This document shows positions 21,962 to 62,104 of a DNA stretch of 64,000 nucleotides, piece after piece. Below the pieces are notes generated by a model. That model saw only the letters and a program-made list of their open reading frames with translations, was not told the DNA's origin and did no database searches. Made by a program: the position numbers and the translations under genes. Source of the DNA: Callorhinchus milii (Eukaryota); assembly GCF_018977255.1 (NCBI RefSeq), contig NW_024704755.1:15376001-15440000 (forward strand). Reading direction: 5' to 3'. Position 1 is the first letter of the stretch, and each line of letters opens with the position of its first letter.

Positions 21962-24685
21962 CTTTTATGTGGGTTGATTGTAAGATAGTCAACAATGATG
22001 ATGGTCAACAGTAACACTGCCACAAAGCATAACATAAAACGGATAATCATCATAACGGGCATTCCACCATTATCTGGAAAACAAATTACGAAACTATAAC
22101 ATGTTTACATCAAAACTACTGAATAATCATTCTGTATTGGGAAAATGCACACGTTTTCCTTTTTTTACTGGAACGCTATAAAATGCGCATTCAATCAATT
22201 GCAAATAACAGCGAATAGTAGTGAAAATCAACGCGCGGCATTTTATTAGTGATGTTATAGAGACACAGTTATATATTATGTGACAGCAGTTCCCCATTGA
22301 CTGTGCGCTCAGCTTCAAATGTACCGATAGAATGTGTGTTCTGACCCGAGCCATAGAGAGCCACAGTCACCAAAACTCATTGCATTGGAAATGTGCTCTC
22401 ATCCCGAAAATCTATAAAACATCTCACAAGCGAGTTTTATTTTAATGCAGTGATTGTTGTTATAAAGGAATACGTAACAGCAGATTTGTTCCAAATCGTC
22501 CTCAGAAAATGGAGTGGATTAATGAACCAATAGTATTTATGTTTCATTTGTGAACGCGTTTCAGTCCAAAAGTCCAATTTCTGATGAACGCGCAGGACTA
22601 TTGCACTTTAGAGAGGTTACTGCATGTCAACAACGCTTTGAATGAGACATATTCAGAATTTAATAACAAAACAAGAACATACGCAGATTTGAGATATTCT
22701 TCGATTCAAAGACGACACATTTAAAATTGGATTTTACATATATATGGAGTTTTCAGCGAGAAACTTATATAACTATAAATTGTAGCGTAAATAATGTAAA
22801 TCCAATTGCCAGTAACAAGGTATTTAACAACAAATGACAGTAAGACAAGTAACTTCCTACCATCAACTTCTGTTTTGGGTTCAGAAACGGCGTAGACGGC
22901 AACTGCTGGAATCCGAAGGCTGACATGAGATACCACACAGGTATAAATAACTCCGCTCTGCACAGACTCTGTCTCTTCCATAGAGCTCGAAACTTTGTAA
23001 AGTCCATTTGAATTATTTTCTTTCGTGAAATGTATCCCAGTTTTAACTTCATTGCTATCTTTATTCCAGGTGAGCGTTACATCTTCCGGGTAAAACTCAG
23101 CCGTTTCACACACAAGAGACTGAGACTTTGATGAATCTCTTTCAGAATCTGTGGGGAATATCTTCAGTGGGGTTGGGGGGACTGTAGGGCAGACAGTGGG
23201 GCAGAATCACATTACGGGTGAGCAGTTGGAATATGAAATGTTATTCCCAGTTGAAATGTATATGAATTGATTCCGAGCGACATTTTAACAAAGGAAGGTT
23301 TTCCGAGACGTTAACCCATGTGACGGGCGCTATATAAATGTACGTTATTGTTGGCATAACAAGGAATCTGGATTGCAACGGCAAGAAACTGATCCTGTTC
23401 AGATGTTTTATTTGGAACAACGTTTCTGGTACCAAAGATTAAACGATGCCCTGATTAGAACAGGTAATTCAAAATCATTTCATGACTGTTTGTGGGACAT
23501 TTTTGAGCGCCAATTGTTCATGTTATTTCAAATTGTCTAAGTGTGTTTAAACATTTGCCTTTGATATGAATCAGTATTTTTTTAAATGTCTGGACCACAG
23601 TACAAGGGTTTCTGATTAATAGTAACAAAGCTTGAACCTGAAGCCATAGGGCTCTCGCTCAAACATTGCATTTCTTTGTCTGTGTACACTATAATCTTCA
23701 TGTCTTGATGTGTGAAATCTGACTAAATGCGTTCAGGTCAGAATAAAATACCATATAGAGCTAATATTCTACTGACGGCAGGAGGAGGGTTATACATGTT
23801 TGAAAGCGTTGCATAACGGAGTTATTAGCGACTCACATTCCCACTTTGTTGTGTGGTATAAACCCGCCGTTCCCTTCAGTACAGTAACGAAGGGGCAAAA
23901 CTGCATTTGAATAATATTCCATTGATAAAATGTATTTCGGGTTAAAGTCAAATCTGTTCCCGTGTCCTGTGCTATCATAACTTTTTGTGAGAGTAGAAAA
24001 TAGTACTCTCGCAAAAAGTTATGACAGTACAGGACATCAGTTTAGTGTAGAGTAGTTTATCCATAACGATTTCAAATTGCCTCAATACTCGCCTTTCAGC
24101 ATTCCCCGTTCCTGTTGCACTCACACTTACCATGTACAGTTAAACTGGTTCCAGTCCCATTTCCTGCTATTTTCCCCTTATGGACCGCTGCACAAATATA
24201 GACTCCGGAGTCGTTGAAATTCAGATTTAGGATCTGGAACGTTTTGTAATCAAATATTCTCCTGTTGTCAGGTCGTGTGTGCAAATATTCCCTCTCTCCT
24301 CGCTTCCACCAATATAATGTTGTATCTGAACCAGATTGACTGTCAGCAAACTTGCAGCCGAAGGTAACGTTTGCACCTCGGATTGCTGTTCGCTCTGCAG
24401 GATACTGAATCACTCTCATCGATGTACCACCAGTAACTGTGAGAAAATACATCAAATCTATCATTAGTAATTGTGGAATCTAAAACTAGAAAAGTGACAA
24501 AATAGCTATAGGACAGGATGGAGAGAAGGTGGAAGAAAGGAAAAACAGATGAACGTATTCATTAAACACATTTTGAAACTCTTTATGAATATCGTTTTGT
24601 ATTTAAGATCCGCTGTAGTAAAATAATTACCTGTGAAAATAATCCCCATCAGAGAAAGACAGGGGAACACATCACTCGCCACCAT
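21962..24685 (-). CDS. A3: VJ-C1-TM receptor with Arg in the TM (putative activating), second V subtype
   Basis: Leader 24631-24685; V 24131-24436 (GTSMRVIQYPAERTA..DSGVYICAAV..GTGTSLTV); C1 22861-23181; TM 21962-22073 (DNGGMPVMMIIRFMLCFVAVLLLTIIIVDYLTINPHK). Canonical splice sites, frame preserved. Confidence 0.85.
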
Positions 24686-25571: not shown

Positions 25572-27109
25572 TCAGTCTGGACGTTGGTTCAACGGTTCAT
25601 CTGAAGGATAAGAAGAACACTCTGCAAACATATTGCGCCTTTCACGCGGAACAGCTTCTCCGGATATCTGGAACTACAGCGACGACAATGCAGAACACAG
25701 CATTACAGCATTGAAGCATCAGCTTAGAATATGGACTCAAAGTCTCAACCTTGGGCTTAAACCCAAAGTGCACATGTTACCAGGCATCACCTCGTTTAAT
25801 TGCACAGCTTCCTCAGTCTCAGCTGTGGATAATGCTCGTGGATGGTGTTCAGTGGCGGTCAGCAGACGTGAAACATATGCATATTTTGGAGGGTTGGACT
25901 TTAAGACAAAGAGGTTCCGCACAAACTCTCATCAGGTTATGTTTCACGAATTGTGCACAAACTTGATGTTAGGAGTGGGAATGGACATCGTAATGGATCC
26001 CTGGGTTGAACGCGAGGCCACTCACTTGGCATTTACGGCTGATCAATGATGAGCTCATGAGAAACCGAGATCGTTCAATTGGAGAGAAGAATGTTTTTTT
26101 TTGGTGTTTTCTGAAACTCAAGGACGCAGTTCGGTCCTCACCAAATACCAAAAATGTTTGTAGCAGAATCCATAACAGCTTTTAAAAGGATTTTAGAACT
26201 CATTGCTCCTTTGCCTTTTGTATGGATTTTAAATTACTGTTATGAAGACTATGGATAAACCATGTGACAGTTGTAGTTTAAGAATTGACAAAATGTATTA
26301 TTCGTTAAGATGTGCTGAGTTGTAGTATTTTGGGTTGAAGTTATGCAGTGATCGAAATTAAAATTGTATTTCCATTTAATATGCTTTTAATAATATTCTT
26401 GCGTTTGGTATAGCGCCTTATCATGTCTTCGAGAAGTCTGAAGCGCTTTTAAAATGAATAAAACGCGAAAGTTATTAATGGACAAACAATATAAATAACC
26501 ATATAACGTTCACCGCATTTATTACTTTTTGTGTGATTTCTTAATGCCAATTTCGCTCTTTATTCACACTCACCGCACACAGTTAATCGCGATCCAGATC
26601 CTCTTCCAATTATTGATCCCTGACGGACCACTACACAGCGACAGACTCCAGAGTCCTGTAAACTCACATTCAAGAACTGGAAGAAGCCGTTTCCTTTAGT
26701 TTTTACACCAAATAGTTTCCTGCGATCCTCCTTTGTATCCAAATAGCCGCTCTCACCCTCCTTATCCCACTGCACCTTCACTCCTGAACTGCCTTGAGGG
26801 AAGGGAAAGTTACAGTGGAAGGTAACGTGTGTCCCTCTGATGGCAGCCACAGGGTCGGAGATTTGAATCACTTTCACCGAAGGATCGCCATCAACAGTCA
26901 GAAAATAAAGTCAAACACTGACTTCTTAGATGATAAGCAATGGAGAAAACAAATGAGTAAAAGAGGAGAAAACGTAGGTGTATAAGATAAATGTCACATG
27001 AAAACAAGTTTGCACATATTTCATAGAAGAACTGAACTATAGAATGAACATATATACCTGTTGAAATAATATGTAAGGCCGACAGGTACAGGAAGACAAC
27101 ACTCCCCAT
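25572..27109 (-). pseudogene. X3: C1-less leader-V(J) unit, damaged copy
   Basis: Leader 27058-27109 (MGSVVFLYLSALHIIST). V 26574-26894 has lost its acceptor AG (ttctgactg versus ttctgacag in X5), and DSGVYxC is changed to DSGVCRC. Candidate 42-nt stalk exon 25781-25822 and candidate terminal exon 25572-25600. Confidence 0.7.
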
Positions 27110-33349: not shown

Positions 33350-36300
33350 TTACTTGGATCTTGGTTCCCTGCAGATAGCTGCTGCTGCTCCTCCGTGGTT
33401 TCTCACATGGAGCTCTGCATACTCTGTATTCTTAACTCTACTTTTAAGATTCCCTGTTTTATTGGAAGGATGTAAATCCAGAGCGGCATATGTCAGTTTG
33501 TGCTCCGCTGCCCCTTGCTTGGTCTGTAAAGGCAATTTTTGAGAATTTGATTATATTAATTCATTTTATTCTTCAGAAATCTCCTCGAATACGCAGCACC
33601 ACTTGCCCCATAGCTCATTTGGTTAAGTCACTTCTCCTTTAAAGAACTGAGTCAAACAGAATCCAGCAGTTACAACTTCTACCACGAAAAGGTTAGTAAA
33701 GAAAAGTGAAAATCAATCAGTTTATGAGTTGTTCATTGACCTACAGAAATGTGGGTATATATTTCTGTATATAATTGATGACCCAGTGCCTTATAGATTG
33801 ATGCACAATAGCTGGTCTTTTTCACAAGAAAAATAAATGTCTATACAGTGACAAATTGTCGTGAGCATATCACAGCCCAGGACAGTGTCAGAGAGTGAAC
33901 ATTAGAGGAGAAAGAAAGATTAACCACAGAAATGTTACAAACAGTCTCATAGTGAACACTGAAGTGAGTTCCACTCTATTTACCAAAGCAAGGAAATCCA
34001 GTTGAATACAAAAGGTTTATGTTTCGATTTTGTGTTTGAAAGATATACCTGGGCGTACACAGTGCTCTCCTGTTGTTTAGGTCTTGGAGTTTTCTTGGAA
34101 CTGGTCAAATTCAAGGTGACATAAGCCACCGGCTCATTCTCTCCTCTGTGCATCGTCTATAAAACAGAGTGTGATCACAACAACAGCAACACATTGCATT
34201 TGTAGAGCACCTTTCACTTCGGAAGGACATTCCAGGGCGCTGCTGGAATGTTGTCCTCACTGTTCTGAAGATTGCTGTGTAAGTACTTATCTGAATGTCC
34301 ATAAGTTTAAAATATTTAAGACATAGCTTTCATATATTTTAAAAGCAGACAATTTTATTGAATAGTCTGTCACCAAATGTATGTCACCGGGCACCTCATA
34401 TTTGAATGATACATTGAGGCTGCAGAGATGCTCTGAGGGAATACATTTAAAATGTTCTAATTTATTTCTGAAGAACGGTATCTTTCCATCACAACAACCC
34501 TGTTTTCAGATGAAACATCTGCTGAGTTGAATTTAATAAATGTACCTGCTCTTCGCAATGACTCGATCCCTTCTGGTTTCTGCGTGGACCTTAGAAGGAA
34601 ATTAACAGAAGAAGAATTCACTCAATTTCCACAACAGTAATTTTGAATATATTTTGGTTAGACTGAATGAAAAACGACAAAACCCAAAAGCTGCCAGAAT
34701 CGTTTTTTTTTAAAAAGTATAAAGTTGTCTTGCATCTAACTCTAATTTAAGCCCAGGAGTAGAATCAAATAAATCACACAACCATTAATTGACAAACTAT
34801 TTTGCCCTCTCACTCTTATTGCTGTAAACATAGTTCCATTCTCTGAACTTGTTCTCTGTAACTCCATCATAGAGTCCCTCCAAATCCCTCTTTCCCAAGC
34901 CACCTTCAAAATCTTCATCAAATTAACCAAGAGAATAGATAGTTTCGGGTATGAGATATAAAACCAAAGAGGTAATATTAAACTTATATAAATTGTCAGT
35001 GTCAGAACTAGAATACTGTATCCAGGATTGTTTACCTCACTTAGGAAATTTACCAGACTGATCCCGGGGAAGATTGGTGCTGCGAGTTCAGTGGCCCAGG
35101 CAGAATGTGCATTTTATATAATAAAACATTTTCTCGCTGTATTTTATAAAATTAATCAATTGTAGCACAATGTGGAAAAGATGGGTTAATGGGATGTGGT
35201 CTCTTTAAAGAGGGAATACAGACACCATAGGCTGAATGACCTTCTGCACTGTACATTTCTGTAATTGTATCACAACAGATTTCAGACATTCGTTGCATGG
35301 AGATTTCTGATTAAATATGCAGCTAAATGTAAGCAGGGAGAGATTCTGTTAGGGCATTTGTCAATCAATCGCAATATATTAATGATTGGCGTCACTTTAC
35401 AGGATGTCTTTCGTCTTTCTCTCCTTGTTATCTAGGGGACCGAGGACAGCCTTGAGGACAGCCTTGAGGACAGCCTTGACCGTGCCTTCAGCTCCCCTCT
35501 CGACTCTCTAACCCCTCCTCGCTCCCTCCCTTCCCTCCCCTCACGCTGACCATTTCCCCCTTGCTCGGGTCCTGACCCAACTGTACAGCGCCTTGGTACA
35601 TCCTCCCGATGTGAAAGGCGCTCTATAAATGGAATCTTGTTCTTGTTGTTATCTGGAATTCTCTAAGGTATAAATTGAATATTATTTTTTCAATTAGGTG
35701 CCGCTTAAAAGGTTAGTCCAAAAGATAAGCGCCCATAGATTTGGGGAGAGCATATTAACGTGGATTGGGGAATGGTTAACGGGTAGGAAACAAAGAGTTG
35801 GGATAAAGTGGTCCTTTTTCAGATTGGCGGGATGTGACTAGTGGAGTGTCACAAGGTTCAGTCCTTGGGCCTCAGTTATTTATGATCTACATCAACGATC
35901 TAGATGAGGACATCGAAGTTAATATATCTAAATTCGCAGAAGACACAAAAGTAGGAGGATGTGTTAACACGGAGGACGACATTAAAAAAATGCAGCGTGA
36001 CATAGATAGCTTAGCTGATTGGGCAGGTAGGTGGCAAATGAAGTATATTGAAGGGAAGTGCGAAGTCATCCACGTAGGTAGCAAAACCGGTAGAGCAGGT
36101 TATTTTTTAGAAGGGGAGAGATTGGAATGTGTTAGCCTCCAGAGGGACTTGGGTGTCCTTGTACACCAATAACAGAAAGTTAGTCTGCAGGTGCAGCAAG
36201 CAATTAGGAAGGTGAACGGTATGTTAGCATTCATTATGAAAGGATTAGAATATAAGAGTAGGGAAGTCTTGCTTCAACTGTATAGGGCCCTGGTGAGACG

Positions 36301-39300
36301 ACACTTGGAATACTATGTGCAGTTTTGGTCTCCTTATTTAAGGAAGTAGTACTTGCCTTGGAGGGGGTGCAGTGTAGATTTACTAGGTTAGTACCAGAGA
36401 TGAAGGGGATGAGTTACGAGGATAGGCTGACCAATTTGGGCCTATATTCTCTTGAATATAGAAGAATTAGAGGGGATCTTATACAAACCTATAAGATCAT
36501 CAAAGGGCATGATAGAGTAGATAGTGGGAGACTGTTTCCACTGGTTGGAGAAACTAAAACCAGGGATCACATCCTTAAAATCAGAGGCAGCCGTTTCGCA
36601 CTGAGTTGAGGAAGAACTTCTTCACTCAAAGGGCGGTGAATGTATGGAATGCACGACCCCAAAGGGCTGTTGATGCTCAGTCCTTGAACATATGCAAGAC
36701 TGAGATAGATAGATTTCTTATTGCAAAAGGGCTTAAGGAATATAGGGATCAGGCAGTGTCAGGTTATTAGCTGGAGTTAGATTAGAAAATCAGACATGAT
36801 TGAATGGCGGGACAGGCTCGAAGGGTCGAATGGCCTACTCCTGCTCCAACATGTTATGTTATGTTAAATTTTGTGTTAAATTAAACATTTACATTTAACC
36901 TGAATTAAACAGGAATATATCTTACCTTTCTTTTTGCTTAATTGCCATTGCTTTCCAATGATGATCAAAAGCAGCAGAAATGCCAGGCCTCCCCCTGCAC
37001 ATCCAGCGATCAGCGCATAAGGAAGCTGAGCGTCACTCTCTACAAGGACAGCATAAACTGAATGTGTTATTGAACACAGCAATGAATTACAGTTTCAGTA
37101 AATGCGCGGTGCATCCGAATAGAGATATGTTAGCAGGTTTTATTATTTGATATTTTATTTTTAAACAGGGTCTTAGTAGATCCGTAGGAATCCAAGGCAC
37201 TTTTAATGAGAAACTAGATAGCCGAGCTCGTCAACAAGACTTAAAATTGCAGGATCCCTCACTGGGGTGAGGGGTCTCGCCAAATCTTTGACAAATACTA
37301 TTCCGATTAAGCTAGAAAGGTGAACCTCTCCATGGACATGAAGCACATTCCATTCCAGACACCAAAACAATTAGAGGTGAACGACATTATTGAGCAGAGA
37401 CCAGGAGTTTGAAATGTGATGAGTTTTTAAATCCTTCTTCTCAGGCAGATGGTATGAATCTTTTCAATTCAAAGACGATACACATTAAGCTGATTGTTAT
37501 TTTGTATATATTTATATGGAGTATTCGGCTACAAAACTATATGATCATAATCTTCAGTGCAAACCAAATTAAATATTTTCCAAAAACAATTCAGTTAATA
37601 ACAATTAACAGTAGGATATTGGCCAATTAGTGGAGTCCTGTGGCTTAGTGGTTAGAGCAATCACCGCACAAGCTAGAGACCCTGGCTTCGATTACCGGGT
37701 CGGGCAAAACATTGGGCAAGTTTCTCTACACCACACGTCTGTATTCATCTAGCAGTAAGTAGGAATCCAGTTGTTAGTCAATTGGCAGATCGCTTTCCTG
37801 GGGATAATAATAATACCTTAAAATACAATAATTTAAAAAAAATACTTAGGTCACTCAATCAACGACTGTTTGTGGAACACTGCTGTGCAACAATTGCTCC
37901 CGAGAGTCATCCACAAAACATACATTCAATTCACTTTCCAGTTTATTTGTGAAGCACTTCAGACTTCTCAAAGACGTGATACAGCGCTATATCAAATGCA
38001 AGGATTATTTTTATTGTGAAATTACCTGTGTTGGATTTAGAAACTGAATATCTGGCAACTGCTGGAATCCGGAGGCTGATGTGAGATACCAGACAGGTAT
38101 AAACAACCCCACTCTGTACAGGCTGTGTCTCTTCCAAATAGCTCGAAAATTCATAAAGTCCCTTTGAATTCCTTTCTTTAGTAGAATTTATCCCAGTTTT
38201 AACTTCATTGTCATCTTTACTCCAGGTCAGCGTTATATCTTCCGGGTAAAATGCAGCCGTTTTACACACAAAGGTCCTAAATGTTTTTGAATCTATTTTA
38301 GAATCTCTGGGGAATATCTTCAGTGGAGTAGGGGGAACTGTAGGAGAGACAATGGAGCAGAATCATATTACTGGTGATCAGTTGGAATATAAAATGTTAT
38401 TCCCAGTTGAAATGTACATGAATTGATTCCTAGCAACATTTTAACAAGGAAGGTTTTCCGAGACGTTAACCAATGTGACGGGCGCTGTATAGATGTACGT
38501 TGTTGTTGGCATAACAAGGAATCTGGATTGAAACGGCAAGAAACTGATCCTGTTCAGATCTTTTATTTTGAAAAATGTTTCTGGTAGCAAACATTAAAAG
38601 ATGGCCTGCAGGAGGTCCAGCCTCTATTCACGAATTAACAGCTGGACGAAAGGATTTAACTATGACGATAAGATGGATAAACGTGATTTATGTTTGATAG
38701 ATCTGAGAATAATTTGATTGAGCTGTCAACGAATGCTAAAATAGTTTTATTTTAAAATAGTTTTAAAAAAGAAAATGTTACTTAAAACAATTATTAAGCA
38801 ATTTAAATTCCCACTTTGCTGTGTTCAAGAATTCAAGATCCTCATCCTCACCTACAAGGCCATTCACGGCCTTGCTCCCTCCTACCTCTCTGACCTACTA
38901 TCCCCCTACCTACCTGCCCGTACCCTCCGTTCCTCGGGCTCCGGTCTGTTCCACATCCCCCGCCCTAACCGCCCTACCATCGGTGGCCGGGCCTTCAGCC
39001 TCTCAGCCCCGAGGCTCTGGAACTCCATCCCCCAGTGCCTTCGCCGCTTCCTCCCTTTCCTCCTTCAAGGCCGGTCTCAAAACCTTTCTCTTTGACCGTG
39101 CGTTCAGCTCCCTTCTCGACTCTCTACCCCCTCCTCGCTCCCTCCTCCCTGCCCTCACCCTGACCATTTCCCCCTCCTCGCTCCCTCCCTTCCCTCCCCT
39201 CACCCTGACCATTTCCCCCCTGCTCGGGTCCTGACCCAACTGTCCAGCGCCTTGGGATATCCTCCCGACGTGAAAGGCGCTCTATAAATTGAATCTTGTT

Positions 39301-40097
39301 GTTGTTGTTGTTGTTGGTATAAACCCGACATCTTCCATCAGTACGATAACAAATGGGCAATACTTTAGATGAATATTGCATTGATAAAAATATTTCAAGT
39401 TTAAATAAAATATTTCGCTGTGTGCTGTAGGATCACATGGGATTAAACGATTAAACAAACAATTTTGCCCATAACGATTTCAAAATGCCGCAATGTTCGC
39501 CTTTCAACATTATTTACATTATCAACTGTATTCACACTTACCATGTACAATTAAACGTGATCCATTTCCATTTGCTGCTATTTTCCCCTGACGGCTCACT
39601 GCACAGAGATAGACTCCTGAGTCATGGAAACTCACGTTTAGGAGCTGGAACGTTTTGAAATTGAATATTTTCCTGTTGTCAGGACTTGTATGTAAATATT
39701 CCTGTTCTCCTCGCTTCCACCAGTAAAAGGTTAAATCTGAAGTGGACTGAATATCGGCAAACTTGCAGCCGAAGGTAACGCTTTCACCTTGATTTGCTGT
39801 CTTGTCTACAGGATATTGGATCACTTTCATCGATGCATCCCCAGCAACTGTGAAAAAATAAATCAAATCTATAACTAGTGATTATAGAGTTGAAGCAATG
39901 TGACAAAATAAGTATAAGGAAAAAGGGAAAAAAGGCGGAAGAAAGAGAAAGCGAGGAAGAGATTTATGCATTCACTGAAACATTTTGAAACTCTTCATCA
40001 ATATCATTTTGTATTTAAGATCCGCTGTCGTAAAACAATTACCTGCGAAAATAATGCCCATCAGAGAAAGACAGGTGAAAACACCACTCGCCACCAT
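33350..40097 (-). CDS. I4: complete VJ-C1-TM inhibitory receptor with ITIM/ITSM-like tail (SIRP-alpha-like architecture)
   Basis: Seven coding exons: leader 40043-40097; V 39542-39847; C1 38026-38337; TM 36926-37039 (ALIAGCAGGGLAFLLLLIIIG); cyt1 34546-34589 (GPRRNQKGSSHCEEQ); cyt2 34049-34156 (..PVAYVTLNL..ESTVYAQ); cyt3 33350-33523 (..KLTYAALDL..NTEYAELHV..). Phases 1-1-1-1-0-0 join without a stop. Confidence 0.88.
35434..35644 (+). mobile_element. 5'-truncated L2 insertion with a 9-bp TSD (TTGTTATCT), I4-specific
   Basis: Absent from the I6 and N1 introns. Three copies of the 12-mer GAGGACAGCCTT lie at its 5' junction (35442-35477). Confidence 0.75.
35681..36866 (+). mobile_element. CR1-type LINE RT fragment, I4-specific
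   Basis: SGVSQGSVLGPQLFMIYINDL..KFAEDTK RT motifs and an (ATGTT)n tail. Absent at the equivalent I6 position near 60640. Confidence 0.9.
38825..39315 (+). mobile_element. L2-type LINE 3' fragment in the I4 V-C1 intron
   Basis: FKILILTYKAIHGLAPSYLSDLL..GGRAFS motif and (GTT)n tail; it interrupts gctgtgt|ggtataaa, which is continuous in the paralogs. Confidence 0.85.
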
Positions 40098-42974: not shown

Positions 42975-45887
42975 CATCAGAAAAAATAACAAGGACAGAT
43001 TATACATTAAAATACCACTCCCCGCCATCACCCAACACTAGGATTCCGATCAGTTTTGACCCTGATGGTCTGTAACAAGCTGATCTACAACAAGTGTTTT
43101 GTCCAGAAAAATGTTTGTGTGTCATTTGACTTCCTGCCTTTGAGGGTTCAGGAAGTTGAGTTTGCATCGAAAGTGTAATTTGTAAGGTCACGTGATCACT
43201 AATGCTATGATGAGATTAACCCAATCCATTGGAAGCACATAAAAGATTTAAATGTTTCCAGCCTTTAAGGCAGAATTCAAGGTCACGTTGTGGATCTCGG
43301 GATGTTGGGGTTAACTAATACCTATTTGGTGGATCATCCGGGTGTCGAACCCACACAGAAAACCACGGTTAAGATTCTGCCAAGAGGGTTGGAGAGAGCG
43401 AGAGTGAGAGAGAGAAATGGAGAGAGCATGAGAGTGGGTGAGAGAGGTAAAGAAAGTGTTTGAGAAAGCGTGAGAGAGAAGAGGGAGAGAAAGTGATTCA
43501 GAGGGCGAGAGAGAACACGATAGAGAGATGGGGACAGAGAAACAAAGAAAGTGAGAGACAGAGGATCAGAGAGAGGAGGAGGTGAGGGCAGCGTTTCTTG
43601 GTTCATTTCTCAGGACAGATAGATGATTGGAGGCTGTCTTGGCCTCCGCGGAGAGACCGAGGACAGACACCGAGGGATGTGCTGTGTGGTTTCCTCACAG
43701 AAAGCTCTCTCTTTCCCCAGTGAGAAACATCTCTATGTCCGTCATCGCACAGCCCCTCCCCATCACACCCCTGCGACCCCCGACCTGGCACAAACACCAG
43801 CTTGCTTCATGCCCCCCACCCCATCTGCCCCACCATCGCCATCTGCCCCTGATCTCTGGAGTTCCATTTGTGGATCACTCCAAATCATTCCCTCCCTCCC
43901 CTCTTTCAAAGCAGTTGAATAAATATTTGACCACGCTTTTGATCATCGTTTCCTCGCCCCAGCCCCTCGCCCCCTCACATATTTGTATAGCGCCCCCAAA
44001 TAAAAACAGAAATCGCTGGGAACACTCAACAGTTCAGGCAGCATCTATGGAGAGAAGAAAATTAGTTAACGTTTCAGGTCAATGACCTTTCGTCAGAATT
44101 GGGGGATATTGAAAGGGAGCAGTTAATAAGGAAGAACAAAGTGGGCGGGAAAGAAAGACATAGAAAAAGTTAAGTGGAGGACAGTAGATGATGAGGTCAG
44201 AGATTTTGATGGTGCAAGATAAAAGATGGCAATAATGGGAGATTCGAGAAAGAAAAGATGCTTCTGCCACCGAGAGGATGTGTGAGTGGTTAAAGAAGAG
44301 GAGGAGGGCCGAGGCAAGGCTGAGAGGAGATAGGAGTGTTGTTTGTTTGAAGAACAAATCAGATAGATTTCTCGTAGATAATAATATCTCGGGTTACAGT
44401 ACATAGTTTCGGACGCGGCATCTCAGGCGACTGCCAGGAAGGAGGAACCCGAACTGATAGACCTTGGTTTTCTTTCGCCTCGCAAATTCATATGCTTTTG
44501 TGTTCTTAAGTTATTGTTGTTACCAACTTTGTGGGATCAGAAAATAGATCTAAACAATACTTCTCAACTCAAAGATTGGATGCATTTAATAGATTTCTGC
44601 ATGTCCCAGACATTGCTTTCCCCGGAGGCATGGAACAATCAATGGACTACCATTATGAAATTCATTGAACATTTTATTTATTGCAATTCAAAATGTTGAA
44701 ATAAAATCTATGTTCGATTACAATGCACGATACAGGGAACTTCGATATAAATTTTAGGCAAGTGGTATTACAGGTAACCCACAGAAATACAATAGAACCT
44801 ATATTATTTGCAAAGCCATAATCATCACACATACAAATAGCATGAGAATCCGGGTTGTGGAGAAGGCTCTGTGGCTAATGGTACATAGATTTATTAACAC
44901 CATCAACATCATTTTCGGTGACAGTCAGAAAAAGCAAAACTTGATCGACAATTCATGTACAACCGGACTCCGGGATATGCCTTGAAATTATTTAAAACAC
45001 TATATTCGCTGCGTTTGGTGTATTGCATTGTATTAGTAATTGTCGGTTCATTGGAGCCAAATTGACCAAGCTGATGTATAATATTTTGACTTGGGTTTAC
45101 GAAGAAAATCTGTGAAATTGCTGATATGTAACGGGTGAAAAATAAATAAGAGGTGATATTCCAGATATATTCCGACTCCTAAATGGTATAACTCAAACGC
45201 ATTCAAATATATTTTATACAGTATACTGCTCATAATTTATAATCTTCTGTTCTTCCAGTCCGTGTATTCCATTAGCATAATTGAATCACCTCAATCGTTT
45301 CTTCCTCACTTCATCTATAACAAAACAAGTAGTGTAATCGTGAATATCACCAATCCTTTGATTCTATGATCAATTGTAATAATTGCTGATTTTCACCAAA
45401 CAAATTGATGATTCATTCTGCAATGTTTACAACGAGACTGGAACCGTTACTCGTTTAGTTTAATTTTAAACGGTAATTAAACATATTCGGACAACACGAT
45501 TTGCAGTGAGATCGCCTTTTACGTTGGAAGGACGTCTGAAAGCGCTTGGCTGTGTTTGTGGGGCTCCGGAGCTGGAGACGGAATCCGAAGTATTGCATAT
45601 GACCCAAACCCAACCATGTAACACGGATCTGGTTGCTATTGCACGAATGTATTGTTCAATATTTCCGGATACCTGAAAGTTTGGATTAGATATGTTTATA
45701 TCCATTGATTATTAGAGATTCCGCCAACAGAACAAAAAGTAATTTCCGCATTGTAAAGTGTGTTGTCCCTGTAGCAGCGAACAACATGAACCTGTCCCCC
45801 TTTCATTGATAACTGTATGTGCGACGATATAAACACAATATTTGTCAATGAAAAGTCAATGCTCTTTTAAAGCGAAGAATGTTTTAC

Positions 45888-48800
45888 CTTTTATGTGGGT
45901 TGATTGTAAGATAGTCAACAATGATGATGGTCAACAGTAACACTGCCACAAAGCATAACATAAAACGGATAATCATCATAACGGGCATTCCACCATTATC
46001 TGGAAAACAAATTACGAAACTATAACATGTTTACATCAAAACTACTGAATAATCATTCTGTATTGGGAAAATGCACACGTTTTCCTTTTTTTACTGGAAC
46101 GCTATAAAATGCGCATTCAATCAATTGCAAATAACAGCGAATAGTAGTGAAAATCAACGCGCGGCATTTTATTAGTGATGTTATAGAGACACAGTTATAC
46201 ATTATGTGACAGCAGTTCCCCATTGACTGTGCGCTCAGCTTCAAATGTACCGATAGAATGTGTGTTCTGACCCGAGCCATAGAGAGCCACAGTCACCAAA
46301 ACTCATTGCATTGGAAATGTGCTCTCATCCCGAAAATCTATAAAACATCTCACAAGCGAGTTTTATTTTAATGCAGTGATTGTTGTTATAAAGGAATACG
46401 TAACAGCAGATTTGTTCCAAATCGTCCTCAGAAAATGGAGTGGATTAATGAACCAATAGTATTTATGTTTCATTTGTGAACGCGTTTCAGTCCAAAAGTC
46501 CAATTTCTGATGAACGCGCAGGACTATTGCACTTTAGAGAGGTTACTACATGTCAACAACGCTTTGAATGAGACATATTCAGAATTTAAAAACAAAACAA
46601 GAACATACGCAGATTTGAGATATTCTTCGATTCAAAGACTATACATTTAAAATTGGATTTTACATATATATGGAGTTTTCAGCGAGAAACTTATATAACT
46701 ATAAATTGTAGCGTAAATAATGTAAATCCAATTGCCAGTAACAAGGTATTTAACAACAAATGACAGTAAGACAAGTAACTTCCTACCATCAACTTCTGTT
46801 TTGGGTTCAGAAACGGCGTAGACGGCAACTGCTGGAATCCGAAGGCTGACATGAGATACCACACAGGTATAAATAACTCCGCTCTGCACAGACTCTGTCT
46901 CTTCCATAGAGCTCGAAACTTTGTAAAGTCCATTTGAATTCTTTTCTTTGGTGTCATTTATCCCAGTTTTAACTTCATTGCCATTTTTATACCAAGTCAG
47001 CGTTACATCTTCCGGGTAAAACTCAGCCGTTTCACACACAAGAGTCTGAGACTTTGATGAATCTCTTTCAGAATCTCTGTGGAATATCTTCAGTGGGGTT
47101 GGGGGGACTGTAGGGCAGACAGTGGGGCAGAATCACATTACGGGTGAGCAGTTGGAATATGAAATGTTATTCCCAGTTGAAATGTATATGAATTGATTCC
47201 GAGCGACATTTTAACAAAGGAAGGTTTTCCGAGACGTTAACCCATGTGACGGGCGCTATATAAATGTACGTTATTGTTGGCATAACAAGGAATCTGGATT
47301 GCAACGGCAAGAAACTGATCCTGTTCAGATGTTTTATTTGGAACAACGTTTCTGGTACCAATATTAAACGATGCCCTGCAGGAGGTCCAGATATTCATTC
47401 ACCAAATTAACAGTTGGATGAAAGGATTTAACTTCGACGATAAGATGGGTAAACGTGATTTATGTTTGATAGATCTGAGAAGTAATTTGATTGAGCTGTC
47501 AACGAATACTAAAATAGTGCATTCTTTCCAATAGAGGAATAACAATAGAAAGGGACACAATCCTAATACTTTGGCTAAACCTGGTGAGACGTGAAATGAA
47601 ACCATTCTATTCACATGTAGTTCAGTGAAATTGTGGAAACCACTCCCATAAGTGGCCTTAAATGCCGATTTAAGTGGGATATTTATTGATAAGGGAGAGA
47701 AATAAAAGTTTTAAGGGGTCTGGAAAGTGGCGGAGAGATTGGATGAAAAGTTCTGCCACCGTTCTCGAACAACAGTAACCTATATGTATTGGGCGCTCTT
47801 CACACAGGATACCGTCCCGGAGAAAACTGGAGATTTCACCACAATTAGAGACATAAGCAAATCCTCCCCTTTCACTCCAACATTGATTTTGTTCTGCTCT
47901 GTTTTTAAATTTGATAAGTTTCCAACGAATTTTCCATAATTAGAACAGGTAATTCAAAATCATTTCACTACTGTTTGTGGGACATTGTTGAGCGCCAATT
48001 GTTCATGTTATTTCAAATTGTCTAAGTGTGTTTAAACATTTGCCTTTGATATGAATCAGTAATTATTTAAATGTCCGGACCCCAGTACAAGGGATTTTGA
48101 TTAATAATAATAATGCTTGAACCTGAAGCCATAGGGCTCTCGCTCAAACATTGCATTTCTTTGTCTGTGTACACTATAATCTTCATGTCTTGATGTGGGA
48201 AATCTGACTAAATGCGTTCAGGTCAGAATAAAATACCATATAGAGCTAATATTCTACTGACGGCAGGAGGAGGGCTATACATGTTTGAAAGCGTTGCATA
48301 ACGGAGTTATTAGCGACTCAAATTCCCACTTTGCTGTGTGGTATAAACCCGCCGTTCCCTTCAGTACAGTAACGAAGGGGGAAATTGCATTTGAATAATA
48401 TTTCGTTGATAAAATGTGTTTTGGGTTAAAGTCAAATCTGTTCCCGTGTCCTGTGCTATCATAACTTTTTGTGAGAGTAGAAAATAGTACTCTCACAAAA
48501 CGTTATGACAGCACAGGACGTCAGTTTAGTGTAAAATAGTTTATCCATAACGATTTCTGTAGTCCTGTAGCTCAGTGGTTAGAGCACTCGCTTTGCAAGT
48601 GAGAAACCTGAGTTCAATTCCAGGCAGAGGGCGAAACCTTGGGCAAGTTTCCTTACTCCACACAGAGCCTAATAATAATCCCTCCAAAAAAAAACAATAA
48701 TTAAATTGGTCATTTTCAATCTACGACTGTTTGTGGGACATTGCTGTGCGCAATTGGCTGCCGCGTTCGCCCACAAATATAGTCAATTCACTTTACAGTA

Positions 48801-50395: not shown

Positions 50396-51814
50396 TCAGT
50401 CTGGACGTTGGTTCAACGGCTCATCTAAAGGATAAGAAGAACACTCTGCAAACATATTGCGCCTTTCACGCGGAACAGCTTCTCCGGACATCTGGAACTA
50501 CAGCTATGACAATGCAGAACACAGCATTACAGCATTGGAGCATCAGCTTAGAATATGGACTCAAAGTCTCAACCTTGGGCTTAAACCCAAAGTGCACATG
50601 TTACCAGGCATCACCTCGTTTGATTGCACAGCTTCCTCAGTCTCAGCTGTGGATAATGCCCGTGGATGGTGTTCAGTGGCGGTCAGCAGAAGTGAAACAT
50701 ATGTATATTTTGGAGGGTTAGACTTTCAGTCCGAGAGGGTCGGCACAAAACTTTCATCAGACTATGTTTTATGAATTGTGCACAAACTTGATGTTAGGAG
50801 TGGGAATGGTCATCGTAATAGATCCCTGGGTTGAAACGTCAAGAAACGCCACTTACTTGGCATTTACAGCCGATCAACTGTGAGCGCATGAAAAACCGAG
50901 AGTGTTCAATTGCCCCTTTGCCTTTTGTATGGATTTTGAATTACTGCTATGAATAATATGGATAAATGATGTAACAATTATTGTTTTAGAATTGATAAAA
51001 TGTATTATTTGCTAATGTGGTGAGTTGTATTATTTTGGTCTTAAGTTATGCAGTGATCGAAATTAAAATTGTATTTCCACTTAATATGCTTTTAATAATA
51101 TTCTTGCATTTGGTATAGTGCCTTATCATGTCTTCGAGACGTCTGATTCGCTTTTAAAATGAATAAAATGCGAAAGTTATTAATGGACAAACAATATTAA
51201 TAACTATATAGCATTCACCGCATTTATTACTTTTTGTGTGATTTCTAAATGCCAATTTCGCTCTTCATTCACACTCACTGCACACAATTAATCGTGATCC
51301 AGATCCTCTTCTAATTATTGATCCCTGATGGACCACTGCACAGCGATAGACTCCAGAGTCCTGTAAACTCACATTCAAGAACTGGAAGAAGCCGCTTCCT
51401 TTAGTTTTTACACCAAATAGTTTCCTGCGATCCTCCTTTGTATCCAAATAGCCGCTCTCACCCTTCTTATCCCACTGCACCTTCACTCCTGAACTGCCTT
51501 GAGGGAAGGGAAAGTTACAGTGGAAGGTAACGTGTGTCCCTCTGATGGCAGCCACAGGGTCGGGGATTTGAGTCACTTTCACCGAAGCATCGCCATCAAC
51601 TGTCAGAAAATAAAGTCAAACACTGACTTCTTAGATGATAAGCAATGGAGAAAACAAATGAGTAAAAGAGGAGAAAACGTAAGTGTATAAGATAAATGTC
51701 ACATGGAAACAAGTTTGCACATATTTCATAGAAGAACTGAACTATATAATGAACATATATACCTGTTGAAATAATATGTAAGGCCGACAGGTACAGGAAG
51801 ACAACACTCACCAT
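50396..51814 (-). CDS. X5: C1-less leader-V(J) gene, possibly secreted single-V protein
   Basis: Leader 51763-51814 (MVSVVFLYLSALHIIST). V 51279-51599 has an intact acceptor and donor and the motifs C..W..DSGVYRC..GSGSRLIV. Candidate in-frame stalk exon 50605-50646 and terminal exon 50396-50424 (DEPLNQRPD*). Leader and V are well supported; the downstream exons are inferred. Confidence 0.65.
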
Positions 51815-58549: not shown

Positions 58550-61500
58550 TCATAACTTGGATCTTGGTTCCCTGCAGATAGCTGCTGCTGCTCCTCCGTG
58601 GTTTCTCACATGTAGCTCTGCATACTCTGTATTCTTAACTCTACTTTTAGGTTTTCCTGTTTTATTGGAAGGATGTAAATCCAGAGCGGCATATGTCAGC
58701 TTGTGCTCCGCTGCTCCTTGCTTGGTCTGTAAAGGCAATTTTTGAGAATTTGATTATATTAATTCATTTTATTCTTCAGTAATCTCCTCAAATAGGCAGT
58801 CACTTCTCCTATAAAGAACTGAGTCAAACAGAATCCAGCAGCTACAATTTCTACCACGAATAGGTTAGTAAAGAAAAGTGAAAATCAATCAGTTTATGAG
58901 TTGTTCATTGACCTACAGAAATGTGGGTATATATTTCTGTATATAATTGATGACCCAGTGCCTTATAGATTGATGCACAATAGCTGGTCTTTTTCAAGAA
59001 AAATAAATGTCTATACAGTGACAAATTGTCGTGAGCATATCACAGCCCAGGACAGTGTCAGAGAGTGAACATTAGAGGAGAAAGAAAGATTAACCACAGA
59101 AATGTTGCAAACAGTCTTATAGTGAACACTGAAGTGAGTTCCACTCTATTTACCAAAGCAAGGAAATCCAGTTGAATACAAAAGGTTTATGTTTCGTATT
59201 TGTGTTTCAAAGATATACCTGGGCGTACACAGTGCTCTCCTGTTGTTTGGGTCTTGGAGTTTTCTTGGAACTGGTCAAATTCAAGGTGACATAAGCCACC
59301 GGCTCATTCTCTCCTCTGTGCATCGTCTATAAAACAGATTGTGATCACAACAACAGCAACACATTGGATTTTAGAGCACCTTTCACTTCGGAAGGACATT
59401 CCAGGGCGCTGCTGGAATGTTGTCCTCACTGTTCTGAAGATTGCTGTGTAAGTACTTATCTGAATGTCCATAAGTTTAAAATATTTAAGACATAGCTTTC
59501 ATATATTTTAAAAGCAGACAATTTTATTGAATACTCTGTCACCAAATGTATGTCACCGGGCACCTCATATTTGAATGATACATTGAGGCTGCAGAGATGC
59601 TCTGAGGGAATACATTTAAAATGTTCTAATTTATTTCTGAAGAACGGTATCTTTCCATCACAACAACCCTGTTTTCAGATGAAACATCTGCTGAGTTGAA
59701 TTTAATAAATGTACCTGCTCTTCGCAATGACTCGATCCCTTCTGGTTTCTGCGTGGACCTTAGAAGGAAATTAACAGAAGAAGAGTTCACTCAATTTCCA
59801 CAACAGTAATTTTGAATATATTTTGGTTAGACTGAATGAAAAACGATTCAAAACCCACAAGCTGCCAGAATCGTTTTTATTTTTAAAAAAGTATAAAGTT
59901 GTCTTGCATCTAACTCTAATTTAAGCCCAGGAGTAGAATCAAATAAATCACACCACCTTAACTACAAACTATCTTGCCCTCTCAATCTTATTCCTGTAAA
60001 CAGCGCTATACCAAATGCAAGGATTATTATTAATATTATTATTATTATTGTTCTCTGTAGCTCCATCATAGAGTCCCTCTTTCCCAAGCCACCTTCAAAA
60101 TTTTCAACAAATTAACCAAGAGAATAGATAATTTGGGTATGAGATGTAAAACCGAAGAGGTAATATTAAACTGATATAAATTGTCAGTGTCAGAACTAGA
60201 ATACTGTATGCAGGATTGTTTACCTCACTTAGGAAATTTACCAGACTGATTCCGGGGAAGATTGGTGCTGCGAGTTCAGTGGCCCAGGCAGAATGTGCAT
60301 TTTATATAATAAAACATTTTCTCGTTGTATTTTATAAAATTAATCAATTGTAACACGATATGGAAAAGATGGGTTAATGGGATGTGGACTCTTTAAAGAA
60401 GGAATAAAGACACCATAGGCTGAATGACCTTCTGCACTGTACATTTCTGTAATTGTATCACAACAGATTTCAGACATTTGTTGCATGGAAATTTCTGATT
60501 AAATATGCAGCTAAATATAAGCAGAGAGAGATTCTGTTAGGGCATTTGTCAATCAATCGCAATATATTAATGATTGGCGTCACTTTACAGGATGTTTTTC
60601 TCTCCTTGTTATCTGGAATTCTCTGCTATTAACTGAACTTTTGTGTTAAATTAAACATTTACATTTAACCTGAATTAAACAGGAATATATCTTACCTTTC
60701 TTTTTGCTTAATTGCCATTGCTTTCCAATGATGAACAAAAGCAGCAGAAATGCCAGGCCTCCCCCTGCACATCCAGCGATCAGCGCATAAGGAAGCTGAG
60801 CGTCACTCTCTACAAGGACAGTATAAACTGAATGTGTTATTGAACACAGCAATGAATTATAGTTTCAGTAAATGCGCGGTGAATCCGAATAGAGATATGT
60901 TAGCAGGTTTTATTATTTGATATTTTATTTTTAAACAGGGTCTTAGTAGATCCGTAGGAATCCAAGGCACTTTTAATGAGAAACTAGATAGCCGAGCTCG
61001 TCAACAAGACTTAAAATTGCAGGACAGTCACTGGGGTGAGGGGTCTCGCCAAATCTATGACAAATACTATTCCGATTAAGCTAGAATGGTGAACCTCTCC
61101 ATGGACATGAAGCACATTCCATTCCAGACACCAAAACAATTAGAGGTGAACGACATTATTGAGCAGAGACCAGGAGTTTGAAATGTGATGAGTTTTTAAA
61201 TCCTTCTTCTCAGGCAGATGGTATGAATCTTTTCAATTCAAAGACGATACACATTAAGCTGATTGTTATTTTGTATATATTTATATGGAGTATTCGGCTA
61301 CAAAACTATATGATCATAATCTTCAGTGCAAACCAAATTAAATATTTTCCAAAAACAATTCAGTTAATAACAATTAACAGTAGGATATTGGCCAATTAGT
61401 GGAGTCCTGTAGCTTAGTGGTTAGAGCAATCACCGCACAAGCTAGAGACCCTGGCTTCCATTACTGGGTCAGGCAAAACATTGGGCAAATTTCTTTACAC

Positions 61501-62104
61501 CACACGTCTCTGTATTCATCTAGCAGTAAGTAGGAATCCAGTTGTTAGTCAATTGGCAGATTGCTTTCCTGTGGATAATGATAATACCTTAAAATACAAT
61601 AATTTGAAGTACTTCGGTCACTCAATCCACGACTGTTTGTGGTACACTGCTGTGCACAAACTGCTGCCAAGATTCACCCACAAAACATACATTCAATTCA
61701 CTTTCCAGTTTATTTGTGAACCGCTTCAGGCTTCTCAAAGACGTGATACAGCGCTATATCAAATGCAAGGATTATGTTTATTGTGAAATTACCTGTGTTG
61801 GATTTAGAAACTGAATATCTGGCAACTGCTGGAATCCGGAGGCTGATGTGAGATACCAGACAGGTATAATCAACGCCACTCTGTACAGGCTGTGTCTCTT
61901 CCAAATAGCTCGAAAATTCATAAAGTCCCTTTGAATTCCTTTCTTTAGTAGAATTTATCCCAGTTTTAACTTCATTGTCATCTTTACTCCAGGTCAGCGT
62001 TATATCATCTGGGTAAAATGCAGCCGTTTTACACACAAGCGTCAGAAATATTTTCGAATCTATTTCAGAATCTCTAGCGAACATCTTCAGCGGGGTAGGG
62101 GGGA
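58550..62104 (-). CDS. I6: inhibitory VJ-C1-TM receptor, 5'-truncated by the window edge (leader and V expected just beyond 64000)
   Basis: C1 61793-62104; TM 60696-60809; cyt1 59715-59758; cyt2 59219-59326 (VAYVTL, TVYAQ); cyt3 58550-58726 (LTYAAL, TEYAEL). 62.2-64 kb is homologous to the V-C1 intron of N1 (2.3-3.75 kb). Confidence 0.85.

What the first reader, a model, noticed from the sequence alone, without database searches (positions are those of the whole stretch)
33350..37039. Hidden three-exon cytoplasmic tail builds a tandem (ITIM + ITSM-like) x2 module like SIRP-alpha
Joining TM (114 nt), cyt1 (44 nt), cyt2 (108 nt) and cyt3 gives VAYVTL..TVYAQT..LTYAAL..TEYAEL. VAYVTL and LTYAAL fit the ITIM consensus (I/V/L/S)xYxx(L/V). 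TEYAEL and TVYAQT resemble the ITSM TxYxx(V/I) but do not match it exactly. The alternating order matches human SIRP-alpha (ITYADL/TEYASI/LTYADL/SEYASV). The same exons are intact in I6 (58550-60809). cyt2 and cyt3 each hold one ITIM plus one TxY motif at similar spacing, which suggests an exon duplication.
Basis: partly seen in the sequence, partly recalled or inferred. Interest (0 to 1): 0.75.

Follow-up and report, generated by a model that had tools for sequence, protein, structure and literature searches.

The report
Elephant-shark SIRPα-like inhibitory receptor tail
The flagged stretch is the real, already-annotated membrane anchor and three-exon cytoplasmic tail of an elephant-shark immune receptor, and its four tyrosine motifs line up one-for-one with those of human SIRPα; it is a fairly ordinary inhibitory receptor that hints the SIRPα signalling tail is very old.

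Summary
On the minus strand, TM (37039-36926), cyt1 (34589-34546), cyt2 (34156-34049) and cyt3 (33523-33350) have AG/GT borders and compatible phases. With leader, V and C1 exons they give one 370-aa open frame containing VAYVTL, TVYAQT, LTYAAL and TEYAEL.

The tail is not hidden. The window is Callorhinchus milii. The exact 370-aa product is on record in NCBI's annotation. A 266-aa isoform named "NCR3-like" carries the same tail. The I6 tail equals a RefSeq model, and paralogs are auto-named "SIRPα-like".

SIRPα kinship is supported:
- BLASTP aligns all four tyrosines colinearly (E=1e-5).
- Tail profile against tail profile gives 90% probability.
- The shark tail profile scores human SIRPα at 34.8 bits, against at most 11 bits for ten other ITIM tails.

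Against membership, there is one C1 domain rather than two, and the V domain is not specifically SIRP-like.

The exon duplication is well supported (hhalign 98.3%, E=1.6e-14), and paralogs carry extra tandem cyt2-like exons.

No strict ITSM exists in these two genes. SHP-1/2 recruitment is inferred, not tested.

Verdict: an uncharacterised new member of a known kind, and part of a paired-receptor cluster.

The parts
40043..40097 (-). Gene A leader exon (ATG at 40097; 55 nt, phase 1 out)
39542..39847 (-). Gene A V-set exon with a J-like end (NGNGSRLIV)
   Evidence: (V-set E=7.8e-7)
38026..38337 (-). Gene A C1-set exon
   Evidence: (C1-set E=1.1e-15)
36926..37039 (-). Gene A connecting-peptide/transmembrane exon (uncharged TM, LPYALIAGCAGGGLAFLLLLIIIG)
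35434..36865 (+). Dead retroelement (LINE RT fragment plus a SINE-like piece) inserted antisense in the TM-cyt1 intron of gene A; absent from I6
   Evidence: RVT_1 E=1.4e-8
34546..34589 (-). Gene A cyt1 exon (44 nt, GPRRNQKGSSHCEEQ). It keeps the reading frame: skipping it gives a 7-residue tail.
34049..34156 (-). Gene A cyt2 exon, tail unit 1: ITIM VAYVTL (34129-34112) and TVYAQ (34063-34049)
33350..33523 (-). Gene A cyt3 exon, tail unit 2 plus C-terminus: ITIM LTYAAL (33496-33479), TEYAEL (33427-33410), stop 33352-33350
61793..62104 (-). I6 C1-set exon (the V and leader exons lie beyond the window end)
60696..60809 (-). I6 TM exon (1 nt different from gene A, Ile>Phe)
59715..59758 (-). I6 cyt1 exon (identical to gene A)
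59219..59326 (-). I6 cyt2 exon (1 synonymous difference)
58550..58726 (-). I6 cyt3 exon (7 nt differences; ends ...RSKL then TGA). The whole I6 tail is identical to RefSeq model P0001.

Best explanation
The region holds the last four exons of an annotated Callorhinchus milii gene. The gene encodes a type I membrane receptor: leader, V domain with a J-like strand, one C1 domain, an uncharged transmembrane helix and a 108-residue disordered tail.

The tail is two copies of a roughly 37-residue unit. Each unit has an ITIM (xxYAxL[D/N]L), a basic linker (SKKT..K) and a second tyrosine 22-23 residues later. Unit 1 is exon cyt2 and unit 2 is the start of exon cyt3. This is the same layout as the four-tyrosine tail of SIRPα (SHPS-1) and is most likely homologous to it.

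Inferred mechanism, by analogy with SIRPα:
1. Ligand engagement lets Src-family kinases phosphorylate the tyrosines.
2. The ITIM plus downstream-tyrosine pairs, especially LTYAAL...TEYAEL in cyt3, dock the tandem SH2 domains of SHP-1 or SHP-2.
3. The phosphatases dampen nearby activating signals.

The gene sits in a tandem cluster of at least 250 kb. Neighbouring near-identical ectodomains splice instead to a transmembrane exon containing Arg, with a 5-residue tail. These are putative activating partners, so the cluster looks like a paired-receptor family.

Shown here: the exon structure, the open frame, its presence in public annotation, conservation of the motifs, the internal duplication and the similarity to SIRPα. 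Inferred: phosphorylation, phosphatase recruitment, inhibitory output and the ligand.
For: Structure:
- Seven-exon model with AG/GT borders, giving 370 aa.
- Pfam finds C1-set (E=1.1e-15) and V-set.
- The exact product is on record in GCA_018977255.1, MU249845.1:15408350-15417097.
- Isoform P0005 has a 100% identical tail.
- The I6 tail equals P0001.

Conservation:
- The same tail occurs in Heptranchias, Heterodontus, Mobula and Scyliorhinus proteins.
- Four Tyr plus L30, E45, Q51, K53, L66, L68 and S71 are invariant in 8 diverged tails.

SIRPα kinship:
- Tail BLASTP against human SIRPα (P0038): 30.4 bits, E=1e-5, four Tyr colinear.
- Full-length BLASTP is colinear, E=1e-13.
- hhalign of cartilaginous-fish tails against mammalian SIRPα tails: 89.9%, E=1.7e-6.
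- The tail HMM scores SIRPα at 34.8 bits, other human ITIM tails at 11.2 bits or less, and 2000 shuffled SIRPα tails at 13.0 bits or less.
- SIRPα (2wng) ties for the best solved-structure match, E=1.9e-15.
- SIRPγ and SIRPα are the best non-immunoglobulin matches to the C1 domain.

Duplication:
- Unit 1 against unit 2 profiles: 98.3%, E=1.6e-14.
- Single-sequence shuffle test: P=0.004.
- Two tandem 111-nt cyt2-like exons in a paralog.

Paired partners: three Arg-containing TM exons in the window.
Against: - There is one C1 domain, not the two of SIRPα.
- The V domain alone has no specific match to SIRPα or NKp30 V domains among solved structures.
- RefSeq names for family members are inconsistent: NCR3-like, TAPBPL-like, Ig lambda-like, SIRPα-like.
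- No mammalian SIRPα reached E<=0.001 in the library-wide profile search. At 34.8 bits it would have E of about 0.0015. Some uncharacterised teleost proteins with repeated ITIM units score higher, 39-42 bits.
- TVYAQT, the best-conserved motif, has Thr at +3 and fits no SHP or SAP consensus, so its partner is unknown.
- dN/dS over whole tail exons is not low (0.44-1.6), so constraint is confined to the motifs.
- There is no transcript, phosphorylation or binding data.
Confidence: 0.75

Rival explanations
1. This is a generic ITIM tail on a V-C1 receptor family specific to cartilaginous fishes. The likeness to SIRPα is convergence of short SH2-docking motifs (YAxL[D/N], xEYAx[ILV]) at the spacing a tandem-SH2 phosphatase requires, not common descent.
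For: - ITIM pairs 18-30 residues apart occur in many unrelated receptors (established knowledge).
- The V domain is not SIRP-specific.
- There is one C1, not two.
- The library-wide profile search does not reach SIRPα at E<=0.001, and teleost repeat proteins score higher.
- Automatic names are mixed.
Against: - SIRPα scores three times higher than ten other ITIM tails (34.8 against 11.2 bits or less).
- The alignment covers the linkers too (LNL..KK.P.P).
- The full-length alignment is colinear, including the leader/V junction and the C1 domain.
- SIRPα/γ are the top non-immunoglobulin C1 matches.
Confidence: 0.2
2. The tail works as a switch or an activating module (ITSM-type, recruiting SAP/EAT-2 or other SH2 adaptors) rather than as a pure phosphatase-recruiting inhibitor.
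For: - Two of the four sites have Thr at -2.
- Paralogs carry strict ITSMs at the same positions: TEYAEI in P0015 and TVYAKI in P0164.
- The invariant TVYAQT fits no ITIM consensus.
Against: - Gene A and I6 have no strict TxYxx[VI].
- Two perfect ITIMs are present.
- The closest relative, SIRPα, signals through SHP-1/2 (PMC12975943).
Confidence: 0.1
3. Gene A is a non-functional duplicate. The 1.4-kb retroelement in its TM-cyt1 intron disturbs splicing, and only I6 or other paralogs are expressed with the full tail.
For: - The insertion at 35434-36865 is absent from I6.
- The two copies differ about as much in tail exons (2.0%) as in introns (2.9%), so there is no visible selection since the duplication.
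- Nearby copies have decayed tails.
Against: - The insertion is intronic and antisense.
- All splice sites and the 370-codon frame are intact.
- Two isoforms of gene A are in the public annotation.
Confidence: 0.1

Closest known systems
SIRPα (SHPS-1 / PTPNS1 / CD172a), mammals
   Same: - Leader, V domain with J-like strand, C1-set domain, uncharged TM and a long tail.
- Four tyrosines in the same order: ITIM, (T/S)xYA.., ITIM, (T/S)EYA..[ILV], at similar spacing (22/14/23 against 24/17/26).
- The tail is the best-scoring human ITIM tail against the shark tail profile.
- It belongs to a cluster with activating relatives.
   Different: - One C1 domain instead of two.
- About 24% ectodomain identity.
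- The second motif has Thr rather than Ile at +3, and the fourth has Leu rather than Val.
- The family is expanded to many tandem genes with 1 to at least 5 tail units.
- The ligand (CD47?) is unknown, and orthology is not established.
SIRPβ / SIRPγ (activating and tail-less SIRP relatives)
   Same: - Three neighbouring genes in the window splice similar V-C1 ectodomains to a TM exon with a basic residue and a 5-residue tail (β-like).
- One copy has an uncharged TM that ends in a stop after 7 residues (γ-like).
   Different: - The basic residue is Arg, with an Asp further along the TM, not the Lys of SIRPβ.
- The adaptor is unknown.
- These variants arose within cartilaginous fishes, so they are analogous rather than orthologous.
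NKp30 (NCR3), the RefSeq name given to gene A
   Same: An N-terminal V domain with a J-like strand. The 266-aa isoform lacks the C1 exon, so it looks like a single-V receptor.
   Different: NKp30 has an Arg-containing TM and a short tail without ITIMs (established knowledge). Gene A has a C1 exon, an uncharged TM and a four-tyrosine ITIM tail. No NKp30 structure matched the V domain at E<=0.01.
Other ITIM/ITSM-pair tails (PZR/MPZL1, BTLA, PECAM-1, CD33-type Siglecs, LAIR-1)
   Same: One ITIM followed 18-30 residues later by a second ITIM/ITSM-like tyrosine. This is the generic docking site for tandem-SH2 phosphatases.
   Different: These have only one pair each.

Membership tests
SIRP family (SIRPα type) | N-terminal V-set domain ending in a J-like G-x-G-x-x-L-x-V strand | tested here: met
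   Pfam V-set E=7.8e-7. NGNGSRLIV aligns to SGAGTELSV of human SIRPα.
SIRP family (SIRPα type) | Two membrane-proximal C1-set domains (V-C1-C1) | tested here: not met
   There is a single C1 exon and a single Pfam C1-set hit. That C1 aligns to either d2 or d3 of SIRPα.
SIRP family (SIRPα type) | Uncharged TM plus a cytoplasmic tail with four tyrosines arranged as two ITIM-plus-second-tyrosine units | tested here: met
   All four Tyr align colinearly with human SIRPα.
SIRP family (SIRPα type) | Tail sequence closer to SIRPα than to other ITIM receptors | tested here: met
   34.8 bits against 11.2 bits or less for ten other tails, and 13.0 bits or less for shuffles. The library-wide E would be about 0.0015.
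SIRP family (SIRPα type) | V domain binds CD47 | not testable with these tools
   The V domain shows no specific sequence match to the SIRPα d1 domain among solved structures.
SIRP family (SIRPα type) | Phosphorylated tail recruits SHP-1/SHP-2 | not testable with these tools
   Inferred only from the motifs and from SIRPα biology (PMC12975943).
SIRP family (SIRPα type) | Orthologous genomic position (synteny with the tetrapod SIRP cluster) and the same exon borders in the tail | not tested
   The flanks fetched showed only family members; the cluster is at least 250 kb. No tetrapod genomic DNA was available.
ITIM | (I/V/L/S)-x-Y-x-x-(L/V/I) | tested here: met
   VAYVTL and LTYAAL match. Both are conserved across the family.
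ITSM | T-x-Y-x-x-(V/I) | tested here: not met
   No match in gene A or I6: TEYAEL has Leu and TVYAQT has Thr at +3. Paralogs do match at the same positions: TEYAEI in P0015 and TVYAKI in P0164.
NKp30 / NCR3 (RefSeq label of gene A) | Single V domain, Arg in the TM, short tail without ITIM | tested here: not met
   Gene A has a C1 exon, an uncharged TM and a 108-aa ITIM tail. No NKp30 hit for the V domain.

The most novel reading that the evidence does not exclude
This cluster is the cartilaginous-fish counterpart of the SIRP family. If so, the four-tyrosine SIRPα signalling tail arose by duplication of a single 36-37-codon exon before cartilaginous and bony vertebrates split. It still behaves as an exon-sized module, present in 1 to at least 5 copies per gene. 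An α-like, β-like and γ-like division of labour has evolved within one tandem array.
Probability: 0.45. Interest if true: 0.5.

Novelty: new member of a known kind. Interest (0 to 1): 0.3.

Why it matters
SIRPα is a major 'don't-eat-me' checkpoint receptor, and SIRPs have been discussed as relatives of antigen-receptor ancestors because of their V-J-C1 build (PMC2785349). A clear SIRPα-type tail on V-C1 receptors in a chimaera and in sharks would date this signalling module to the base of jawed vertebrates. It would also show its origin by exon duplication.

For annotation, it shows that the name 'natural cytotoxicity triggering receptor 3-like' for this gene is misleading. For general biology it is a predictable finding: an inhibitory Ig-superfamily receptor in a paired-receptor cluster.

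Tried and rejected
- The tail-only word-indexed homology search reached only Callorhinchus proteins. It was too insensitive to test SIRPα kinship, so I fetched true SIRPα tails with a recalled human query, which the database confirmed at 100%.
- Gene A against I6 as a test of selection was uninformative: tail exons differ by 2.0% and introns by about 2.9%, so the duplicates are too recent.
- dN/dS on whole tail exons against older paralogs was noisy (0.44-1.6). Constraint is at motif level only.
- My first coordinates for cyt1 and for the I6 C1 exon were off by 2 nt. Both were corrected.
- Synteny walking with the look-up of encoding contigs listed only the gene asked for in each 10-kb flank and was abandoned.
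- The paper on the mouse SHPS-1 gene structure could not be fetched.
- Literature searches for shark or elephant-shark SIRP found nothing specific.
- Rejected the NKp30-like reading (RefSeq name): the domain, TM and tail features do not fit.
- Rejected the idea that the exons are chance ORFs: an exact annotated product exists, and the tail is shared by chimaera and shark/ray proteins.
Full report
**What is there**

Read on the minus strand, the region contains four exons with canonical AG/GT borders.

| Exon | Coordinates | Length |
|---|---|---|
| TM | 37039-36926 | 114 nt |
| cyt1 | 34589-34546 | 44 nt |
| cyt2 | 34156-34049 | 108 nt |
| cyt3 | 33523-33350 | 174 nt including TAA |

The phases are 1/1, 1/0, 0/0 and 0/stop. 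Upstream lie a leader exon (40097-40043), a V exon (39847-39542) and a C1 exon (38337-38026), all in phase 1. The seven exons give a single 1113-nt, 370-aa frame. Pfam finds C1-set (E=1.1e-15) and V-set.

The tail reads ...EPVAYVTLNLTSSKKTPRPKQQESTVYAQ|TKQGAAEHKLTYAALDLHPSNKTGNLKSRVKNTEYAELHVRN... Motif coordinates were verified. The I6 copy (60809-58550) is intact. It differs at 9 of 440 nt, and one change turns the stop into Leu, followed by TGA.

**Is it more than chance**

- Shuffling the tail gives at least 2 strict ITIMs in 0.3% of trials and at least 3 relaxed sites in 0.015%.
- The same tail is found in proteins of Heptranchias, Heterodontus, Mobula and Scyliorhinus.
- In an alignment of eight diverged tails, the four tyrosines and several flanking residues are invariant, while the linkers vary.
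- Whole-exon dN/dS is not low (0.44-1.6). This fits a disordered tail in which only short motifs are constrained.

**Not hidden**

- The homolog search places the window in Callorhinchus milii.
- The exact 370-aa product is on record in NCBI's annotation of GCA_018977255.1, at MU249845.1:15408350-15417097.
- P0005, named 'natural cytotoxicity triggering receptor 3-like isoform X2', is the same gene without the C1 exon and has a 100% identical tail.
- The I6 tail is identical to P0001, LOC103185949 isoform X2.
- Several paralogs are auto-named 'tyrosine-protein phosphatase non-receptor type substrate 1-like', that is, SIRPα-like.
- Older models (P0003, P0004) read through the cyt1 or cyt2 donor site and were named SIRPβ-like. 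This shows how the tail can be missed.

**Kinship with SIRPα**

The database returned a 100% identical 504-aa protein (P0038) and named primate SIRPα entries. The tests then used those database sequences.

- BLASTP of the shark TM plus tail against P0038: 30.4 bits, E=1e-5, 37% identity over 76 residues. The motifs pair as VAYVTL/ITYADL, TVYAQT/TEYASI, LTYAAL/LTYADL and TEYAEL/SEYASV.
- Full-length BLASTP is colinear from the leader/V junction through C1, TM and tail (E=1e-13).
- A profile of eight cartilaginous-fish tails against a profile of seven mammalian SIRPα tails: 89.9% probability, E=1.7e-6, 75 columns.
- Specificity control: the shark tail HMM scores human SIRPα at 34.8 bits. PZR scores 11.2 bits. 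CD33, Siglec-7, PILRα, LAIR-1, PECAM-1, BTLA, CEACAM1, G6b-B and PD-1 score under 9 bits. The best of 2000 shuffled SIRPα tails scores 13.0 bits.
- Among solved structures, SIRPα (2wng) ties for the best match to the whole protein. SIRPγ and SIRPα are the best non-immunoglobulin matches to the C1 domain.

**Limits of the SIRPα kinship**

- There is one C1 domain, not two.
- The V domain alone has no SIRP-specific or NKp30-specific match.
- A library-wide search with the tail profile found 42 proteins at E<=0.001. All those that I traced with V-C1 ectodomains are cartilaginous fishes. A few uncharacterised teleost proteins with repeated ITIM units also appear. No mammalian SIRPα is in the list; 34.8 bits corresponds to a library-wide E of about 0.0015.
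- Homology of the tail to SIRPα is therefore probable, not proven. Orthology was not tested, because there is no synteny evidence and no tetrapod genomic DNA.

**Exon duplication**

- cyt2 and the first 37 residues of cyt3 align end to end. Both tyrosines are in register apart from a one-residue gap.
- Single-sequence shuffle test: P=0.004.
- Profile against profile (13 unit-1 and 10 unit-2 sequences): 98.3%, E=1.6e-14.
- In the gene for P0008 (L003), two 111-nt cyt2-like exons lie in tandem with the same acceptor context. That gene's cyt3-like exon is dead, with a stop at codon 3 and the ITIM Tyr changed to Cys.
- Other family members carry 1 to at least 5 units.
- Both units are shared by the chimaera and by sharks and rays, and each aligns to one half of the SIRPα tail. 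The first duplication is therefore ancient, not specific to this gene.
- The Thr at +3 of TVYAQT is the first codon of the next exon, and each following unit also begins with Thr.

**Motif classes**

- VAYVTL and LTYAAL are strict ITIMs.
- TEYAEL fits neither the strict ITIM consensus (Thr at -2) nor the strict ITSM consensus (Leu at +3). Paralogs have TEYAEI, SEYSEV and AVYAEV at this position.
- TVYAQT has Thr at +3 and fits no SHP or SAP consensus, yet (E/D)RTVYAQTKQ is the best-conserved stretch of the tail. Its binding partner is an open point.

**Mechanism (inferred)**

By analogy with SIRPα (PMC12975943), Src-family kinases phosphorylate the tyrosines. The ITIM plus downstream-tyrosine pairs, 22-23 residues apart, dock the tandem SH2 domains of SHP-1 or SHP-2, which inhibit nearby activating signals.

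The exon layout allows isoform control:
- Skipping cyt1 (44 nt) shifts the frame and leaves a 7-residue tail.
- Skipping cyt2 keeps the frame and leaves one ITIM pair.

**Context**

The window holds a tandem array on the minus strand.
- Three genes splice V-C1 to another TM exon, DNGGMPVMMIIRFMLCFVAVLLLTIIIVDYLTINPHKR*. It carries an Arg in the membrane span and a 5-residue tail, so these genes are putative activating partners.
- A third copy of the gene-A type, at the window start, has a TAG at the end of its TM exon and lacks cyt1 and cyt2. It is a tail-less form.
- The cluster spans at least 250 kb.

**Verdict**

It represents an uncharacterised cartilaginous-fish member of the SIRPα-like inhibitory receptor kind. 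I found no paper on it in the searchable library. Interest is modest.

Noticed in passing
window 45884-45999, 21958-22073, 11576-11691 (minus strand): Three copies of an alternative last exon encoding a TM with Arg and Asp and a 5-residue tail (..MMIIRFMLCFVAVLLLTIIIVDYLTINPHKR*). It is used by the V-C1 genes that lack the ITIM tail (P0009-type), which are putative activating partners of the inhibitory genes.
   Followed up: partly
window 902-1009 (TM exon) and 1-900: The third gene of the gene-A type (L 4656, V 4406, C1 2273) has an in-frame TAG at the very end of its TM exon (..IIIGKECQLKR*). The stretch that should hold cyt1 and cyt2 is replaced by about 270 bp that includes an RT-like fragment. 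This is a tail-less, SIRPγ-like form or a decaying copy.
   Followed up: partly
window 35434-36865: A dead LINE reverse-transcriptase fragment (RVT_1 E=1.4e-8, with stops) plus a SINE-like piece and a short GGACAGCCTTGA x3 repeat, inserted antisense in the TM-cyt1 intron of gene A. It is absent from I6.
   Followed up: partly
window 38026-38337 vs 61793-62104: The C1 exons of gene A and I6 differ at 17 of 312 nt (5.4%). The changes are mostly amino-acid-changing and clustered near the N-terminal strand. Tail exons and introns differ by only 2-3%. This could reflect diversifying selection or patchy gene conversion in the ectodomain.
   Followed up: no
L003 14918-15028, 15478-15588, 16696-16866, 6630-6785: In the paralog encoding P0008 the cyt2-like exon is tandemly duplicated. 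Its cyt3-like exon is decayed (stop at codon 3, ITIM Tyr>Cys). Another decayed cyt3-like exon lies upstream of the gene.
   Followed up: partly
window 51268-51615 and 26563-26910 (minus strand): A second, diverged type of V exon with its own leader (MGSVVFLYLSALHIIS..) sits upstream of each putative activating gene. It resembles the V exons of P0011, a V-C1-V-C1 model with an ITIM tail but no TM.
   Followed up: no
P0180 (163 aa; NCBI source, unnamed, contig of 106,818 bp): This protein matched the shark tail profile at E=3.4e-6 library-wide. It has a signal-peptide-like N-terminus followed by repeated ETVYA.. / V(I/V)YA(N/D)LDL units and has no Ig domains. Its origin and meaning are unknown.
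   Followed up: no
P0183 (Channa striata), P0188 (Oreochromis niloticus LOC102081169), P0185, P0186: Short, uncharacterised proteins with repeated 'ITYSxI..KKRK..PEESPVYAxVK' units score 39-42 bits against the shark tail profile. P0185 and P0188 start with a TM-like hydrophobic stretch. P0183 and P0188 are teleost proteins; the origin of P0185 and P0186 was not established. The same ITIM-pair unit may be widespread in fish receptors or adaptors.
   Followed up: no
window 34546-34589 (cyt1): The 44-nt cyt1 exon is the only tail exon whose length is not a multiple of three. Skipping it yields ..KKKDDAQRRE*, so the exon could act as an on/off switch for the ITIM tail.
   Followed up: partly
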